Program-made: the position numbers and the translations under genes
IMG/VR virus record: IMGVR_UViG_3300042402_002641
Coordinates: 1 to 64,000 of that record
Strand: one strand, 5' to 3'
DNA length: 64,000 nt
Notes under the pieces: model-generated
Databases searched by the model: none
Seen by the model: the letters and a program-made list of their open reading frames with translations, nothing else
Told to the model about the DNA's origin: nothing
Shown: one piece after another, positions 23,677 through 28,631 of the stretch
Numbering within the stretch: the stretch's first letter is position 1
How the letters are laid out: each line of letters begins with the position of its first letter

Positions 23677-24648
23677 TTATTTCTCTATTTTGATGTTTTT
23701 AGCTATAGGTGCAAAGGCTGTACGCAATTCTTCGGCGTAGGCCATGACACCACGTGGGTTAAGTTCATCTCGATCTATAATTATATAGTTCTGTTCTGCC
23801 CAGTCTTGATATTCTTTGCTTAGTATTGCTTTACTGAACTTGTCCACATACCAGTCCACAATGGTGTTTGGGGTTTGTGGTGGTAATACAACTATCCAGC
23901 CAGCATAAACTTTGAGTCCTGGAATTATATCGCTGAGCAATGGTACATTTGGTAATGCTTTTAGTTTGGGACCACCAGTGAGACCAATGGGCTTGACTTT
24001 GCCAGCTTCGATCAAGGGTTTGGCAATGGCAACGGGCATGATGCCAAATTCTGTGCCGGATTTGCCATCATAACTGGCCACACTAATCACAGCCGGCAAT
24101 GGGCCATTGAAGGCCACGCTTTGTATCTGCCGAGGATCTGCCTTGGTGCGGTGTATGATGTATTCATAGGCCATTCTATGTGCGCCGCCACCTACAGCAA
24201 TGTTAATAGGACTCCCATTGGTGATATATTTCACAAACTCTTGTGGTGTGTTAACTGAGCTTTTACTAGATGCTACTAATACCAAGGGACTTTTACCCAA
24301 AGTCACAGCAGGCTTGAAGCTGTTGTATTCAAATTTCTTTGCGTCTCGCTGCCAGATATCATTGGTTACAAATAGACTCATATGACTGGGCACCAGGAGA
24401 TGCAAGCCATCGCTGGGCGCTGTCATGAAACCATTGCTGGCTATAGTAGCATCAGCACCAGGTCGTGTTTCCACAATGAACGTGATGCCAGGATTTTGTC
24501 GTGCAACTATATCGCTGGCCTTGCGGAAGCTGATTTCATTACCACTTCCAGAAGCAAATCCAATGGTGGTGGTTATGGACTTGTTAGGTGTCCATTGTGC
24601 CCAGGCCAAGGTGGGCATAATCAATAAGGCCAGCAATAATTTTTTCAT
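23677..24648 (-). CDS. Bug/TctC tripartite tricarboxylate transporter substrate-binding protein
   Basis: Signal peptide; IVETRPGADATIA, APSDG, GKVKPIG, LPNVP. Confidence 0.85.
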   Translation of the reverse strand: MKKLLLALLIMPTLAWAQWTPNKSITTTIGFASGSGNEISFRKASDIVARQNPGITFIVETRPGADATIASNGFMTAPSDGLHLLVPSHMSLFVTNDIWQRDAKKFEYNSFKPAVTLGKSPLVLVASSKSSVNTPQEFVKYITNGSPINIAVGGGAHRMAYEYIIHRTKADPRQIQSVAFNGPLPAVISVASYDGKSGTEFGIMPVAIAKPLIEAGKVKPIGLTGGPKLKALPNVPLLSDIIPGLKVYAGWIVVLPPQTPNTIVDWYVDKFSKAILSKEYQDWAEQNYIIIDRDELNPRGVMAYAEELRTAFAPIAKNIKIEK

Positions 24649-24735
24649 AAATGTTCCTTTGTATAAATATTTGTAGACATAGCAAAAATTTTTGCTATTT
24701 TTGTAAATTTATTTATCAATCTCGGAAAATTTCTA

Positions 24736-25476
24736 ATGAATACTAAAATTTTTGCACTAATTAAGAAAAATTTGGACACTGCTTTTGCCTTGCCCAAATA
24801 CAGCTCTGTGCGAGACAGCATTGGCCCAGATACCATAGTTGAGGATCTACCTTGGACTCCGGTACGATACCGAAAGTTCAAAGATACTGTAGAAGCTGAA
24901 CTAGGGTTACCTTGTGAATATCGTGGCACATTAGCACGTATAGTAGAAGACCTCAGCGAACGTTATATAAAACGATTTTTCTCAGAAATTTGGAAACCTC
25001 GTACAGGAGAATACGATCATTCAGGTTGGGCATTAGCAGAAGAAATTGCCAAACAGAATCCTAAAAATGTGCTAGACGTGGGTTGCGGTTATCATCCGTT
25101 TAAAGGACGTATTCCTAACCTAATTGGCATTGATCCGTATAATAACTGCGCAGATTATGAAGTCGATATTCTAGACTACAAAGTTCGACCTGAGACACAC
25201 GATCACATAATAGCATTAGGATCGATTAATTTCAACAGCAAAGATGACATAGAAAAACGGTTTTCTCACTGCGTAAATTTATTGGCTCCTAATGGTAAAT
25301 TCTATTTGCGAGCCAATCCGGGTATTCCGCATAAAACAGGACCGTATGTTGATATATTCCCATGGACATTTGAAATAGTCAATGAGTTCGCAGAACGCTA
25401 CAATCTTAAATTGATAGAATTCAAACGTGAACCTGCTGAACTAGGTCGACTGTTTTTTGTCTATCAAAAATCTTAA
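24736..25476 (+). CDS. class I SAM-dependent methyltransferase with N-terminal extra domain
   Basis: VLDVGCG, GIDP. Confidence 0.8.
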   Translation: MNTKIFALIKKNLDTAFALPKYSSVRDSIGPDTIVEDLPWTPVRYRKFKDTVEAELGLPCEYRGTLARIVEDLSERYIKRFFSEIWKPRTGEYDHSGWALAEEIAKQNPKNVLDVGCGYHPFKGRIPNLIGIDPYNNCADYEVDILDYKVRPETHDHIIALGSINFNSKDDIEKRFSHCVNLLAPNGKFYLRANPGIPHKTGPYVDIFPWTFEIVNEFAERYNLKLIEFKREPAELGRLFFVYQKS

Positions 25477-25685
25477 GGAAGGTCGCTGCGACCCCAACCA
25501 ATATTATTCCAAACTCTTTCATGAATAAAGTACAGGATTGTATTGCACACTAATTGTATTGCAGCGATAATACCGGAGACTGTAAAGTTACCCGATATGC
25601 TATAGGCAATTATAAATGTCGCACCGGATCCTGTGATTCTCCAAGATATAGTTTTTACAAGACTACGTCTAGCAGTATCACTCAA
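25473..25685 (-). CDS. DUF2061-type membrane protein
   Basis: RSLVKTISWR..LYFIHERVW. Confidence 0.85.
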   Translation of the reverse strand: MSDTARRSLVKTISWRITGSGATFIIAYSISGNFTVSGIIAAIQLVCNTILYFIHERVWNNIGWGRSDLP

Positions 25686-26538
25686 GTCCTAAATCCTTGC
25701 GAATTTTTGTAGCACTAATATCTGTTACTGTTTCGTCGAATGATTCTTCACCTGAAGTATATCCTACTCCACGACCCCATCCAATATGCACAATATTAGG
25801 AACTACTTGAATCTCATATTGTCCTTGATATATAGGATCTAAATCACGTTTGATAAATGATTTTACCTGTTCAATAGCAAATGGATTGCTACCTTGCCAG
25901 CCTTGCACATCTCGAACTTGAATGACTACTTGGCCGGTTTTTGCTATTAAGCGTTCGAACAATGCACGATGTCCATCATGCCAAGGTTGCCAGCGACCTA
26001 ACATCTGCACAGTTTCTTTTTGCCAATCAAATGCAGGACGTCTACGATTGGTCAATATGTGATCTCCGATAAATTCTGCCCACTTTTCTGCATTTTGTTC
26101 AGTAACTCGGAAATCATAAACTTCTGGTTCAACGAATGCTGCATTAGTATCAGCATATCGGCTTTCACGGATAGTATCCACCCAAATTGTCCAATCTGCT
26201 TTAAAGTTATTACGCATTTCAACCAATGGTGCGACAAAATCACAGATAACATATTCACCCGAACATTCTAAAGAAAACTGGAGCATGCGCAGACTCTGGC
26301 GAATTCTACCTTCTTTTGAAAAATCCCAATCGTTGAATTTTCTACGAACATCGTCGGCATTGAACCAATCTACTCCTATCTTGAAAAACTCAGGACCCGG
26401 AATACCTTCATAGTTAGATATTTTTTGGGGATTAATTTTCATTAAATCACCATTTGTTTCTAAATAATTTTTTAGAGCCTGTGCAAGATATGTTTTACCG
26501 CTGCCGGGCAATCCCATTATTAAAATCCTAGATGGCAT
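25678..26538 (-). CDS. APS-kinase-like domain fused to HxGH nucleotidyltransferase domain
   Basis: GLPGSGKT, NADDVRR, DFSKEGRIRQ; C-terminal GRWQPWHDGH and ISATKIR. Confidence 0.8.
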   Translation of the reverse strand: MPSRILIMGLPGSGKTYLAQALKNYLETNGDLMKINPQKISNYEGIPGPEFFKIGVDWFNADDVRRKFNDWDFSKEGRIRQSLRMLQFSLECSGEYVICDFVAPLVEMRNNFKADWTIWVDTIRESRYADTNAAFVEPEVYDFRVTEQNAEKWAEFIGDHILTNRRRPAFDWQKETVQMLGRWQPWHDGHRALFERLIAKTGQVVIQVRDVQGWQGSNPFAIEQVKSFIKRDLDPIYQGQYEIQVVPNIVHIGWGRGVGYTSGEESFDETVTDISATKIRKDLGLE

Positions 26539-26588
26539 AATATTTCCTTTAAACTTATAATATATAGCTAAAAATTTTAGGTAATCAT

Positions 26589-26617
26589 AAAAAAAGACTA
26601 CCGAAGTAGTCTTTTTT
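26589..26617 (-). terminator. terminator of the cspA-tmRNA transcript
   Basis: aaaaaagactac-cgaa-gtagtctttttt (UUCG loop on minus strand). Confidence 0.85.
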
Positions 26618-26998
26618 GGTTGTTTTGTTTACAAGGTATTTCCTACCCCGGACCTGCTGTTTTTTAGGCAGCTAGAGCAAATCTGCTTTCATTAGCAGCA
26701 CCGCGAACGGTGTTACCAGTGAAGCTCATTGCGCTAAAGTCGAATGTATCTGCGTTTGCATTTACGAGTTTTGCTTGATTTACGGTCATCGCCTACCGTG
26801 TTGCCGTCTCTATTATCTCACCCTGTCGAAACCATGGCAGGCCCATCATAAAAGGACTAGAGCAAATACTACAGTAACAATAATAAAGCCAACTAATGTG
26901 CTATATTCGTTATCCATACTAATCTCCTTATGGTGGACCTGGCGGGAGTCGAACCCGCGTCCAGAATGCCTTCACTTTGAAGGGATTACAACAATTTC
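26618..26998 (-). ncRNA. ssrA: tmRNA, circularly permuted two-piece form: acceptor piece ~26998-26931, coding piece 26844-~26618
   Basis: T-arm GCGGG-TTCGACT-CCCGC and CAGGTCC-A-CCA lie upstream of 5' GGGCCTG..TTCGAC; 7-bp acceptor stem with G3:U70; tag ORF 26759-26664 ends FALAA*. Confidence 0.92.
26846..26917 (-). CDS. 23-aa hydrophobic peptide inside the tmRNA intervening segment
   Basis: TAAGGAG RBS 6 nt upstream; MDNEYSTLVGFIIVTVVFALVLL*. Confidence 0.65.
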   Translation of the reverse strand: MDNEYSTLVGFIIVTVVFALVLL

Positions 26999-27202
26999 TT
27001 AGGCGGGCTGAATATTACTAGCCTGCTGTCCTTTCTGACCCTGAGTTACTTCAAACCTTACACTCTGTCCTTCTTGTAGGCTCTTGAAGCCACTCGAATT
27101 AATCTGTGAAAAGTGAGCAAATAAGTCTGCGCCACCATCGTCCGGAGTAATGAATCCAAAACCTTTGGCGTCGTTAAACCATTTTACTTTTCCTGTTACC
27201 AT
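26999..27202 (-). CDS. cspA: cold shock protein
   Basis: [19 protein letters not shown]. Confidence 0.96.
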
Positions 27203-27246
27203 TTTACTTAATTTCCTTGTTGTTAAAAAGATGCTGTCTCTGTGTG

Positions 27247-27657
27247 TTATTTAATCCAACCTATGCGTTTTCCCGCAGTTATTCGGCGATCATATTCCTC
27301 GACTGAACTAGGAAATCTCCATGCCCAAACTGCCACGCACAACATAAACAGTGCTGTATATATTATACCACGAACGGGCACTGAAGTCAACCACATGATC
27401 ACCAAACTGGTTGACATCATGAACAGCATGAAATATTTCATTTTCTGCGGGAACACTCTTTTGGTGTTCCAATTTGTGAGAAATGGTCCAAACAACCGGT
27501 GATTGTAGATCCAACGATGCATGCGTTCTGAACCCTTTGAGAAACAGTAGGCCGCGAACACCACAAATATGCTGTAGGGTATGCCAGGGGTAATGACTCC
27601 TATGTAGGCCATACCTAGACTTAGGAATCCCAACGCATTCCAGAATAATTTTTTCAT
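27247..27657 (-). CDS. DUF454/YbaN family membrane protein
   Basis: [27 protein letters not shown]. Confidence 0.85.
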
Positions 27658-28631
27658 TAGGCAGCCACCACTCTGTTAGGTACCGCAGCCACTATGATAT
27701 CTTTATGCAGATTTGGGGTGAATTTTCCCCCTGCCGCACCATTCAGCGTGGCCAATATGTTTTGCGGTTTGGCCTTTCTTATATTTGACCCACCGCTTGG
27801 CAATCCGGGAATTGCGTAGCTGATGTGTATCCAAACAGTTTTGCCTGGTAGATATTCCAACAGCAGTTGGTCATAGGGTATGTTCTTGTTGATCCATTGT
27901 GCTATTTCAAAATAGTCATGCGCTCCTACTCCTCGAAACTGCAGATCTGCAGCCTGGCCAGTGCCGTGCTGTCCGCCACCGATACTAGCACCGTGTCTAT
28001 AAGTGTTGGTAATCAGCATGCTGGGATATTTGGCCTTGATAGGTTCAATGACATTCAATGCCAATCCTGCGAGATTGTTGACCACTGCCTGCGGACCAGA
28101 TACCAAAGGTGAATGTTCTGCCAACTGTGCTATGGTTCTAGGAAAGGTTACATTTTTAATCATCTGGCCAAGAGTAGTACCATTCGGAGTAAGCACAGTA
28201 CCAAATGTAATATCACCCGAGACTGCGGCGGTAGGTCTATCTGCTGGTCTGTCTTTACTGGCTGCTACTCCTTCAGTTTTTGGAGTTGGTGTTGTAGTTA
28301 GTTCTTTGTGTTCAGCAGCAGTAATACGTCCTTCAGCGAGAAATCTATCAGCTTCTGCTTTACCTGCGGTATTGTCATCATCACCTTCTACGTTTTTGAT
28401 AGCTGCTGTTACTGTGACTTTTGGTACTGCTGCAGAGGCAAATGTTCCCGGAGTGGTTGCAGCGTTGTAAAGTGCAATTTCCACACCATTGGCAAACACA
28501 TTGTAGGGATTGTAAAGAGGTTCTTGACGATTTAAACTGCCTGGAGAATGTTGATGAGGTAGATTAGGAAAAGGCCCTATTCCGCCACTTGGGCCAACAC
28601 TAGTCGATTGTGGGGTTGGTGTAGTTGCCAT
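27657..28631 (-). CDS. peptidase M15-type peptidoglycan hydrolase
   Basis: ITNTYR, QHGTGQAADL, WIHISY zinc-ligand motifs. Confidence 0.8.
   Translation of the reverse strand: MATTPTPQSTSVGPSGGIGPFPNLPHQHSPGSLNRQEPLYNPYNVFANGVEIALYNAATTPGTFASAAVPKVTVTAAIKNVEGDDDNTAGKAEADRFLAEGRITAAEHKELTTTPTPKTEGVAASKDRPADRPTAAVSGDITFGTVLTPNGTTLGQMIKNVTFPRTIAQLAEHSPLVSGPQAVVNNLAGLALNVIEPIKAKYPSMLITNTYRHGASIGGGQHGTGQAADLQFRGVGAHDYFEIAQWINKNIPYDQLLLEYLPGKTVWIHISYAIPGLPSGGSNIRKAKPQNILATLNGAAGGKFTPNLHKDIIVAAVPNRVVAA

What the first reader, a model, noticed from the sequence alone, without database searches (positions are those of the whole stretch)
26845..26930. The tmRNA intervening segment is itself a mini-mRNA for a 23-aa membrane peptide
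Seen: the 86 nt between CCA and the mature 5' end consist of TAAGGAG immediately after CCA, a 6-nt spacer, an ORF (MDNEYSTLVGFIIVTVVFALVLL) and a stop 1 nt before G1. This spacer is normally excised junk. Inference: translation competes with or reports on tmRNA maturation (RNase P and 3' trimming), or the excised piece yields a toxin, holin-regulator or exclusion peptide, coupling ribosome rescue to a membrane effector. I know of no described equivalent.
Basis: partly seen in the sequence, partly recalled or inferred. Interest (0 to 1): 0.88.

Follow-up and report, generated by a model that had tools for sequence, protein, structure and literature searches.

The report
Small gene nested inside phage tmRNA
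A giant-phage gene for the ribosome-rescue RNA (tmRNA) carries, in the stretch that is cut out during maturation, a real and conserved mini-gene for a 23-residue membrane peptide, and in related phages the same slot holds many other small genes, a use of this RNA gene I found no report of.

Summary
On the minus strand lies a two-piece (permuted) tmRNA gene. Its 86-nt intervening segment (26930..26845) holds TAAGGAG, a 6-nt spacer, a 23-codon ORF and a TGA one base before G1.

The ORF is not chance. I found 22 distinct variants of the peptide in viral and metagenome contigs, always in this slot. All are in frame, and lengths differ only by whole codons. One Gly is invariant but written with four codons. 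T occupies 64% of second codon positions. pN/pS is 0.54 in frame, against 0.76 and 1.39 out of frame.

The slot behaves as a gene cassette site:
- About 38% of unique segments in an unbiased sample carry a Shine-Dalgarno-led ORF.
- There are at least 22 unrelated ORF families, including a bona fide thioredoxin.
- Nearly identical tmRNA backbones carry unrelated inserts, and the reverse also occurs.

All segments, coding or not, share a 12-bp closing helix and a TGAT or TAAT before G1. In the window the helix pairs the Shine-Dalgarno region with the last four codons. So the stop position is partly a structural given.

Translation, coupling to tmRNA maturation and the peptide's function remain untested. 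Verdict: a real, new variant of genes nested in stable-RNA genes.

The parts
27362..27390 (-). Sigma-70-like promoter (TTGACT, 17 nt, TATAAT, with TG) upstream of csp. It is the likely start of the csp-tmRNA transcript.
   Evidence: 11 of 12 consensus matches. This is a pattern match only, and the number of such sites in the region is not above shuffles.
26999..27202 (-). Cold-shock protein gene (67 aa). Its stop codon lies 5 nt upstream of the first base matched by the tmRNA model (26993).
   Evidence: ORF. (PF00313 CSD, E=6.7e-31). A csp homologue sits directly upstream of the tmRNA in 39 of 130 related loci.
26931..26993 (-). tmRNA acceptor piece: the 3' half of the tRNA-like domain, with the T arm and an encoded CCA end at 26931.
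   Evidence: Rfam alignment starts at 26993. The acceptor stem CAGGUCC/GGGCCUG contains the G3-U pair.
26845..26930 (-). Intervening segment, 86 nt, absent from mature two-piece tmRNA.
   Evidence: It is shown as a 72-nt insertion plus flanks in the Rfam alignments. It has no Rfam match of its own at E<=1.
26924..26930 (-). Shine-Dalgarno sequence TAAGGAG. It begins at the first base after CCA and is followed by the 6-nt spacer ATTAGT.
   Evidence: TAAGGAG occurs three times on this strand of the window, each time followed by ATG at 6-8 nt. A Shine-Dalgarno-like motif in the first 11 nt is present in 26 of 31 coding segment clusters against 3 of 40 non-coding clusters (Fisher 2.5e-11).
26846..26917 (-). 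ORF of 23 codons plus TGA, encoding MDNEYSTLVGFIIVTVVFALVLL: a short acidic head followed by a 17-residue hydrophobic stretch.
   Evidence: The family comprises 22 distinct ORF variants (21 of them, with the window standing in for L125, are aligned in A1). pN/pS is 0.54, with 95% interval 0.36-0.75. Codon periodicity is shown. The maximum 15-residue hydropathy of a family member (L042) is 3.39.
26919..26930 (-). 5' strand of the closing helix, which is the Shine-Dalgarno sequence plus most of the spacer.
   Evidence: Eleven of 12 positions pair with 26860..26849.
26849..26860 (-). 3' strand of the closing helix, which is the last four codons CTA GTC CTT TTA (L V L L).
   Evidence: (duplex -6.8 kcal/mol). 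This helix and the acceptor stem are the only conserved pairs in the family.
26845..26848 (-). TGAT lying opposite ACCA. It contains the ORF's stop codon and U(-1) before the presumed RNase P site.
   Evidence: TGAT in 78, TAAT in 25 and TGAC in 2 of 105 unique segments, coding or not. Cultured phages also have it.
26618..26844 (-). tmRNA coding piece, starting at G1 (26844). The tag reading frame is 26759..26664 (31 aa plus TAA). The 3' end is approximate.
26590..26617 (.). Palindromic hairpin flanked by A and T runs. It is an intrinsic terminator closing the csp-tmRNA unit and is probably bidirectional.
   Evidence: 12-pair stem, listed on the + strand. On the minus strand, one search shows GACTAC TTCG GTAGTC followed by seven T.

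Best explanation
**What it is.** The intervening segment of this phage-encoded two-piece tmRNA gene is a cassette slot. In the window it holds a genuine small gene for a 23-residue single-pass membrane peptide. That peptide family was seen only in this slot.

**Shown.**
- The tmRNA is intact.
- The ORF has a consensus Shine-Dalgarno site at optimal spacing.
- Its reading frame, hydrophobic periodicity and one Gly are conserved across divergent tmRNA backbones.
- The first 12 nt of the segment (Shine-Dalgarno site plus spacer) pair with the last four codons. This forms the closing helix that all segments of the lineage share.
- The stop codon is the TGA of the lineage-wide TGAT that lies opposite ACCA.
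- Inserts are exchanged between backbones. Other inserts include a thioredoxin.

**Inferred.**
- The unit is transcribed from the promoter upstream of csp to the hairpin terminator.
- Ribosomes load on the Shine-Dalgarno site of the nascent or not yet fully processed precursor. The site emerges about 70 nt before its pairing partner. The helix is about half as stable as in non-coding segments (-6.8 against a median of -10.8 kcal/mol).
- RNase P cutting at G1 and 3' trimming back to CCA then free the two tmRNA pieces and destroy the message.
- The peptide acts in trans in the host membrane as an accessory (moron-like) factor. It is not needed for tmRNA maturation.
- The highly conserved tmRNA halves flanking the slot serve as homology arms for swapping inserts between co-infecting phages.
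For: **tmRNA identity.**

**Anatomy.**

**Family evidence.**
- There are 22 distinct ORF variants. Every tmRNA-linked hit of a 3'-end pattern that does not require an ORF had an intact ORF.
- Lengths are 22, 23, 24 and 30 codons.
- D2, G10, V14 and L22 are invariant. The Gly is written GGC, GGA, GGT and GGG.
- By codon position, G is 48% at position 1, T is 64% at position 2 and G is 4% at position 3.
- pN/pS is 0.54 (0.36-0.75) in frame, against 0.76 and 1.39 in the other frames.
- RNAalifold finds no conserved structure in the ORF interior.
- All true homologues found with a degenerate C-terminal pattern lie directly before the tmRNA 5' end. None is free-standing.

**Slot evidence.**
- 34 of 89 unique segments in the unbiased scan carry a Shine-Dalgarno-led spanning ORF.
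- There are 22 peptide clusters, 9 of them membrane-like.
- L052's insert is a thioredoxin (PF00085, E=4e-21) inside a full-length tmRNA_permuted match of 136 bits.
- L089's insert matches phrog_13558 at 1e-12.
- ARAGORN calls permuted tmRNAs around the long inserts.
- The Shine-Dalgarno motif associates with coding status at p=2.5e-11, and closing stems are weaker in coding segments at p=2e-10.

**Cassette exchange.** Seven pairs have backbones at least 93% identical with unrelated inserts, including window/L125 against L038 and L082. Twenty-four pairs have backbones below 70% identical with inserts at least 90% identical.
Against: - There is no expression data of any kind, so translation is inferred.
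- The Shine-Dalgarno site is sequestered in a helix that stacks on the acceptor stem. The fold is -33.2 kcal/mol with z=-3.95.
- 3' maturation may cut within the AU-rich leader and remove the Shine-Dalgarno site.
- Purifying selection is only moderate. The C-terminal LVLL is dictated by RNA pairing, and U-richness favours hydrophobic codons.
- The peptide matches no Pfam or PHROG family, so its function is a guess.
- Close relatives do without the ORF.
- Variants are related, so counts overstate the number of independent events.
Confidence: 0.7

Rival explanations
1. A cis-acting translational device. The act of translating the segment matters, not the peptide. Ribosomes would open the closing helix and the acceptor stem, or shield the trailer from 3' exonucleases. 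That would time or throttle RNase P cleavage and CCA-end maturation of the phage tmRNA.
For: - The Shine-Dalgarno site and the last codons are themselves the two strands of the processing helix.
- The stop lies 1 nt from the RNase P site, so a terminating ribosome would cover the acceptor stem.
- Selection on the peptide is only moderate.
- Some ORF families have no in-frame stop before G1 and read into the tmRNA body.
Against: - Near-identical tmRNAs carry non-coding segments with stronger helices. Cultured phages have non-coding segments too. Maturation therefore does not need translation.
- The slot also holds a thioredoxin and other soluble proteins. This fits cargo better than a leader-peptide device.
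- An invariant Gly with four synonymous codons and an invariant Asp point to a constraint on the product.
Confidence: 0.13
2. A passenger without function. The ORF would be a recently spread or decaying cassette that hitch-hikes in a tolerant site. It would be either untranslated, because the Shine-Dalgarno site is locked in the helix and the segment is degraded quickly, or translated without consequence.
For: - The slot tolerates almost any content, from 4 to 273 nt.
- Presence or absence varies among close relatives.
- Some inserts look interrupted (L108, and L003 within the segment).
- The lack of stops is not statistically informative.
Against: - The family spans backbones only about 60% identical and several acceptor-stem variants, yet every copy is intact.
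- pN/pS is below 1 only in the annotated frame.
- Closing helices are systematically weakened where an ORF is present. This is unexpected if translation were irrelevant.
Confidence: 0.12
3. A chance ORF in AT-rich spacer sequence, with a fortuitous purine-rich run after CCA.
For: Taken alone, the window's ORF reaches only p of about 0.05 in shuffles that keep the segment's ends. The terminal TGA is present in any case.
Against: All the comparative evidence speaks against it.
Confidence: 0.03

Closest known systems
Two-piece (circularly permuted) tmRNA genes, beta-proteobacterial type (Rfam RF01850 and RF04321; Keiler et al. 2000 and Sharkady & Williams 2004, as cited in PMC11915505 and PMC9004378)
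   Same: - The gene order is acceptor piece, intervening segment, coding piece.
- The CCA end is encoded.
- The segment is removed without religation.
- Both Rfam models match the window at full length.
   Different: Here the segment carries a Shine-Dalgarno-led conserved ORF. The largest recent census (PMC11915505) singles out only a tRNA-Ala gene and a repetitive element inside such segments. It holds just 79 phage sequences.
Intervening sequences of 23S rRNA genes that carry an ORF (the S23p-type '23S rRNA intervening sequence protein' of Leptospira, Coxiella and others); recalled from general knowledge, not tested here
   Same: - A stable-RNA gene holds a dispensable insert.
- The insert's ends form a helix.
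- The insert is cut out without religation and sometimes encodes a small protein.
- Its presence is patchy among close relatives.
   Different: - The host RNA and the site differ.
- The peptide matches no Pfam family, so no relation to those proteins was detected.
- Here the insert's helix strands double as the Shine-Dalgarno site and the C-terminal codons, and the insert content is highly diverse.
Homing-endonuclease ORFs in group I introns of tmRNA genes (PMC11915505)
   Same: A protein gene is nested in a tmRNA gene, in a part that is absent from the mature RNA.
   Different: - There is no intron. No group I intron or other Rfam family matches the segment.
- Nothing is spliced or ligated.
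- The site lies between the CCA end and G1, not in the T loop.
- No endonuclease domains are present.
Dual-function RNAs that also encode a small peptide (SgrS/SgrT, RNAIII/delta-haemolysin, SR1/SR1P); general knowledge
   Same: One transcript yields both a functional RNA and a small, often membrane-active, peptide.
   Different: Here the coding part is the discarded piece of the RNA's precursor, not part of the functional RNA. It is also exchangeable as a cassette.
Small hydrophobic type I toxin peptides and small membrane regulators (Ibs, ShoB, TisB; AcrZ, KdpF); general knowledge
   Same: The size (about 20-30 aa), a single hydrophobic helix, and translation held down by sequestering the Shine-Dalgarno site in RNA structure.
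   Different: - No antisense RNA partner was identified.
- No sequence relationship was found. The best match is AcrZ for one of 21 members at E=0.028, which is not significant.
- Toxicity is untested.
mRNAs co-transcribed with tRNAs and released by tRNA processing (E. coli thrU-tufB operon, phage T4 tRNA region); general knowledge
   Same: The ends of a message are defined by RNase P and 3' tRNA processing of a neighbouring tRNA-like structure.
   Different: Here the message lies inside a single RNA gene, between its two halves. It is enclosed by the very acceptor stem that is being processed.

Membership tests
Two-piece (permuted) tmRNA | Covariance-model match above the curated threshold, with the order acceptor piece, segment, coding piece | tested here: met
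   RF04321 scores 143.7 bits (threshold 47) and RF01850 scores 135.7 bits (threshold 84), both at full model length. ARAGORN calls it tmRNA*.
Two-piece (permuted) tmRNA | tRNA-Ala-like acceptor stem with a G3-U pair, a T arm and an encoded CCA | tested here: met
   GGGCCUG pairs with CAGGUCC, giving G3-U. The T arm is GCGGG/CCCGC with loop UUCGACU. CCA lies at 26933..26931.
Two-piece (permuted) tmRNA | Tag reading frame ending in a degradation signal of the ALAA type | tested here: met
   The 31-aa tag ends in FALAA and is followed by TAA.
Two-piece (permuted) tmRNA | The segment is excised in vivo, giving two RNA pieces | not testable with these tools
   No RNA data are available. This is inferred from the family.
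Translated bacterial small ORF | Shine-Dalgarno site at 5-9 nt from an ATG, an in-frame stop, and the frame conserved in relatives | tested here: met
   TAAGGAG, 6 nt, ATG. There are 22 distinct intact variants, and indels occur only in whole codons.
Translated bacterial small ORF | Purifying selection and codon periodicity in the annotated frame | tested here: met
   pN/pS is 0.54 (0.36-0.75), against 0.76 and 1.39 in the shifted frames. T is 64% at codon position 2. The invariant Gly uses four codons.
Translated bacterial small ORF | Direct evidence of translation | not testable with these tools
   No Ribo-seq, proteomics or reporter data are available.
Type I toxin-antitoxin peptide | A cis- or trans-encoded antisense RNA, and toxicity on expression | not tested
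   No antisense partner was sought beyond the promoter scan. There is no homology to known toxin families.
Group I intron with a homing endonuclease | Group I intron fold and an endonuclease domain | tested here: not met
   No Rfam family matches the segment at E<=1. The peptide has no Pfam domain.
23S rRNA-type intervening sequence with ORF (as an analogy) | The insert's ends form a helix, the insert is dispensable among close relatives, and an ORF lies inside | tested here: met
   - Helix: 9.4 of 10 positions pair, against 6.6 for mismatched ends, with many compensatory pair types.
- Dispensable.
- ORF inside.
- Membership in that family itself does not apply, because the host RNA differs.

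The most novel reading that the evidence does not exclude
The nested message and the tmRNA are functionally coupled. After RNase P cuts at G1, the acceptor piece still carries the ORF as a trailer whose stop codon lies 1 nt from the 3' end. In the families that read past G1 there is then no stop at all. A ribosome finishing this message therefore sits at an essentially empty mRNA channel, which is the natural substrate of tmRNA-SmpB. Any 3' trimming erases the stop codon first. The peptide would then be released intact only when rescue capacity is low, and tagged for degradation when mature tmRNA is plentiful. The slot would thus act as a built-in sensor or feedback on trans-translation, and as a way to make a cargo protein's level depend on it.
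Probability: 0.1. Interest if true: 0.9.

Novelty: new variant of a known kind. Interest (0 to 1): 0.72.

Why it matters
**For tmRNA biology.** The intervening segment of two-piece tmRNA genes has been treated as discarded spacer. Here it is a widely used, exchangeable expression slot in uncultured, mainly freshwater phages, with more than 20 unrelated small genes. Processing signals and translation signals are written in the same nucleotides.

**For genome annotation.**
- Gene finders skip ORFs inside RNA genes and ORFs below 30 codons.
- Several cultured phages carry unannotated permuted tmRNAs overlapped by 'hypothetical protein' calls.

**For phage accessory genes.** It reveals a new kind of diversity hot spot, framed by two ultra-conserved RNA half-genes.

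**For mechanism.** It offers a natural system in which ribosome loading, RNase P cleavage, 3' trimming and possibly trans-translation compete on one short RNA.

Tried and rejected
- **Cultured phage relatives.** A megablast of 24 kb around the locus against GenBank phages found nothing. A sensitive blastn of the tmRNA region found only the T-arm and acceptor part in cultured phages. These turned out to carry non-coding segments.
- **Protein-based locus search.** It failed for the peptide: the alignment was not conserved enough and the query was too short. I replaced it with a degenerate DNA pattern.
- **Host identification.** The scan of bacterial genomes with the 25-mer returned only tRNAs and one-piece tmRNAs. 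No host clue and no bacterial counterpart emerged.
- **Family searches.** Pfam and PHROG searches of 21 family members gave nothing significant.
- **Structure of the segment alone.** Its fold is not unusually stable (z=-0.64). Only with the acceptor stem does the helix stand out.
- **The 'no stop ever arose' argument.** I dropped it, because only 1.7% of substitutions in these codons create stops (P=0.23).
- **Clustering.** A first single-linkage clustering collapsed everything into two clusters. I redid it greedily on the segment interiors.
- **Papers.** Keiler 2000 and Sharkady & Williams 2004 are not held in the library. Statements about Caulobacter processing therefore rest on secondary citations and general knowledge.
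- **Searches not run.** I did not run the large protein-database searches. Gene callers rarely report 23-aa products, and the DNA scan had already answered the context question. Structure prediction needs at least 30 aa.

Full report
**1. What is in the window**

ARAGORN finds one RNA gene in the 64 kb window. It is a permuted tmRNA at 26573..27023 on the minus strand, with the tag ANADTFDFSAMSFTGNTVRGAANESRFALAA. Rfam agrees at full model length: tmRNA_permuted at 143.7 bits and beta_tmRNA at 135.7 bits.

Reading the minus strand gives these coordinates:
- The acceptor piece ends in ...GGTCCACCA at 26931.
- TAAGGAG lies at 26930..26924, followed by the spacer ATTAGT.
- ATG lies at 26917..26915.
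- The ORF has 23 codons (MDNEYSTLVGFIIVTVVFALVLL).
- TGA lies at 26848..26846 and T at 26845.
- G1 of GGGCCTG is at 26844.

The unit looks like one transcript:
- a sigma-70-like promoter at 27390..27362;
- a cold-shock protein gene at 27202..26999 (PF00313, E=7e-31);
- the tmRNA;
- a hairpin terminator at 26617..26590.

The window is an exact piece of the 280-kb viral contig IMGVR_UViG_3300042402_002641 (L125). It has no close relative among GenBank phages.

**2. Is the ORF more than chance?**

From this sequence alone the case is only moderate. Shuffling the interior while keeping the ends gives an ORF this long in about 5% of trials.

The decisive evidence is comparative. The 25-nt T-arm/acceptor end occurs in at least 120 viral contigs, and what follows CCA is hypervariable.

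I then searched with a pattern that covers only the last codons, the stop and the tmRNA 5' end, so it does not demand an ORF. Every tmRNA-linked hit in viral and metagenome contigs had an intact homologue of the peptide. This gave 22 distinct ORF variants. Twenty-one of them are aligned in A1.

The coding signature is as follows:
- Lengths are 22, 23, 24 and 30 codons, so every indel is a multiple of three.
- Asp2, Gly10, Val14 and Leu22 are invariant.
- The Gly is written with all four codons.
- Minimum changes by codon position are 37, 17 and 44.
- G makes up 48% of first positions, T 64% of second positions and G 4% of third positions.
- With the start codon and the last four codons left out, pN/pS is 0.54 (bootstrap 0.36-0.75) in the annotated frame, against 0.76 and 1.39 in the two shifted frames.
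- RNAalifold on 21 members conserves only the acceptor stem and a closing helix. The ORF interior has no conserved structure, so its conservation is not an RNA-structure effect.

One argument I dropped. The absence of stops is uninformative, because these codons rarely mutate to stops.

A degenerate search for the C-terminal motif found eight further homologues. All sit immediately before the tmRNA 5' end, and some are in tmRNAs with different acceptor stems. None is free-standing.

**3. The segment is a cassette slot**

In the first scan, which is unbiased with respect to ORFs, 34 of 89 unique segments carry a Shine-Dalgarno-led ORF spanning at least 70% of the segment. Over all loci there are at least 22 unrelated peptide clusters. 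Nine have a membrane-like stretch and the rest look soluble.

Two inserts are recognisable proteins:
- The 84-aa insert of L052 is a thioredoxin (PF00085, 75 bits, E=4e-21; phrog_22). It lies inside a full-length tmRNA_permuted match of 136 bits.
- The L089 insert matches phrog_13558 at 1e-12.

ARAGORN calls permuted tmRNAs around the long inserts.

Inserts and backbones are uncoupled:
- The window's backbone is 94-95% identical to those of L038 and L082, which hold a 61-nt non-coding segment.
- L038 and L082 are in turn 93-95% identical to the backbone of L052, which holds the thioredoxin.
- Twenty-four pairs have backbones below 70% identical but inserts at least 90% identical.

The two ultra-conserved tmRNA halves are obvious homology arms for exchange. 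That mechanism is inferred, not shown.

**4. The helix that explains part of the observation**

In 105 unique segments, nucleotides 1-12 pair with nucleotides -16 to -5. On average 9.4 of the first 10 positions pair, against 6.6 when ends from different segments are combined. Positions 4-11 show A-U, U-A, G-C, C-G and G-U pairs across 71 clusters, which is covariation. The last four bases are TGAT (78), TAAT (25) or TGAC (2), in coding and non-coding segments alike. Cultured phages show the same.

What is specific to ORF-bearing segments:
- The 5' strand is a Shine-Dalgarno sequence in 26 of 31 coding clusters, against 3 of 40 non-coding clusters (p=2.5e-11).
- The helix is much weaker, with a median of -5.3 against -10.8 kcal/mol (p=2e-10).

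In the window, TAAGGAGATTAG pairs with CTAGTCCTTTTA at 11 of 12 positions (-6.8 kcal/mol). The C-terminal LVLL and the ribosome-binding site therefore constrain each other. The helix stacks on the acceptor stem, with ACCA opposite UGAU. Together they fold at -33.2 kcal/mol (z=-3.95). The helix is also predicted in the fold of the whole precursor.

**5. How it most likely works**

*Shown:* an intact tmRNA, a conserved coding ORF in its excised segment, dual-use nucleotides, and exchangeability.

*Inferred:*
- The Shine-Dalgarno site emerges about 70 nt before its partner strand, so ribosomes can load on the nascent or unprocessed precursor. The weakened helix also allows re-initiation.
- RNase P cleavage at G1 (U at -1) and 3' trimming to CCA then release the tmRNA pieces and end the message's life.
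- The peptide has an acidic head, a 17-residue hydrophobic helix and a conserved Gly. It would insert in the host membrane as an accessory factor.
- Its role is unknown. It could be exclusion, lysis timing, modulation of a host membrane protein, or toxicity.

Because close relatives and cultured phages lack any ORF, the ORF is cargo and not part of the maturation machinery. I put 0.70 on this reading, 0.13 on a cis-regulatory role of translation, 0.12 on a functionless passenger and 0.03 on chance.

A more adventurous reading is not excluded. After the RNase P cut, the stop codon lies 1 nt from the 3' end. In the MKYTALCPSCF family and in L003 there is no in-frame stop before G1 at all. Terminating ribosomes would then be natural substrates for trans-translation, which would link the cargo's fate to tmRNA activity.

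**6. Comparison with what is known**

The host gene is a member of the beta-type two-piece tmRNAs, and all the features I could test were met. The nested gene resembles the following:
- ORFs in 23S rRNA intervening sequences;
- homing-endonuclease ORFs in tmRNA group I introns;
- dual-function small RNAs;
- messages released by tRNA processing.

It is none of these. There is no intron fold or other Rfam match, no protein-family match, and no religation.

In the searchable literature I found no report of protein-coding ORFs in a tmRNA intervening segment. The 2025 tmRNA database paper mentions only a tRNA-Ala gene and a repetitive element in such segments, and it holds 79 phage sequences (PMC11915505). 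Two founding papers could not be read, so an earlier mention cannot be excluded.

**7. Limits**

- All evidence is computational and comes from uncultured contigs.
- The variants are related to each other.
- Two of the three DNA scans were aimed at this family, so only the first scan gives a frequency.
- No host was identified.
- Processing enzymes and their order are assumed from general tRNA and tmRNA knowledge.

Noticed in passing
window 26664-26759 (-); also L008, L011, L034, L038, L095: The tag reading frame is unusually long, at 31 aa against the usual 10 or so. It has a conserved core (D-F-S-A-M-S-F-T-G-N-T-V) shared by many of these phage tmRNAs. Other backbones in the same set have ordinary 10-aa tags.
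   Followed up: partly
L002, L012, L017, L019, L078, L090 (101-nt segments); L003: A Cys-rich ORF family (MKYTALCPSCF...HKC) and the L003 ORF have a Shine-Dalgarno site and a start, but no in-frame stop before G1. They read 24-60 nt into the tmRNA body, so after RNase P cleavage they would be non-stop messages.
   Followed up: partly
L265 (Xanthomonas phage XacN1), L266 (Pseudomonas phage UF_RH6), L267 (Xanthomonas phage JGB6), L268 (Stenotrophomonas phage vB_Sm_QDWS359), L269 (Alcaligenes phage vB_Af_QDWS595): Cultured phages carry beta-type permuted tmRNA genes that are not annotated in the records. In three of them, 'hypothetical protein' CDS calls overlap the tmRNA. Their segments (86-114 nt in the four that could be extracted; QDWS595 gave none) are non-coding, with TGAT before G1 and closing stems that are clear in UF_RH6 and QDWS359.
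   Followed up: yes
L004 5061-5137, L010 6981-7055, L049 12221-12295: tRNA genes with anticodon CTA (amber-reading; ARAGORN labels them tRNA-Pyl) lie within a few kb of the tmRNA in several related phages. This may hint at stop-codon suppression or recoding.
   Followed up: no
L031 and L044 intervening segments: Some non-coding segments contain a T-arm-like hairpin (GGTTCGAnTCC), a tRNA-like fragment inside the segment. No Rfam family other than the tmRNA itself matched there.
   Followed up: partly
L050: A GC-rich viral contig has a permuted tmRNA with the same acceptor end but a segment of only 4 nt (CCGA). The long closing helix is therefore not universally required.
   Followed up: no
window 26999-27202 (-) and 39 of 130 related loci: A cold-shock-domain gene lies directly upstream of the tmRNA on the same strand, with no terminator between them. 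As an RNA chaperone it could influence folding of the precursor helix.
   Followed up: partly
window 23677-28631: The neighbourhood is rich in host-like auxiliary genes:
- a TctC-family solute receptor;
- DUF2061 and DUF454 membrane proteins;
- a P-loop kinase-like 286-aa protein;
- a glutaredoxin.

All are on the tmRNA's strand.
   Followed up: no
window 3043 (-): One of the three TAAGGAG sites on the minus strand is followed by ATG at 6 nt. No ORF of 120 aa or more starts there, so it may mark another unannotated small gene.
   Followed up: no
L041: A further insert (48-aa ORF ending TGA-T-GGGCCTG) sits in a tmRNA whose 5' region departs from the usual GGTTTCGAC motif. My pattern-based census therefore undercounts coding segments.
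   Followed up: no
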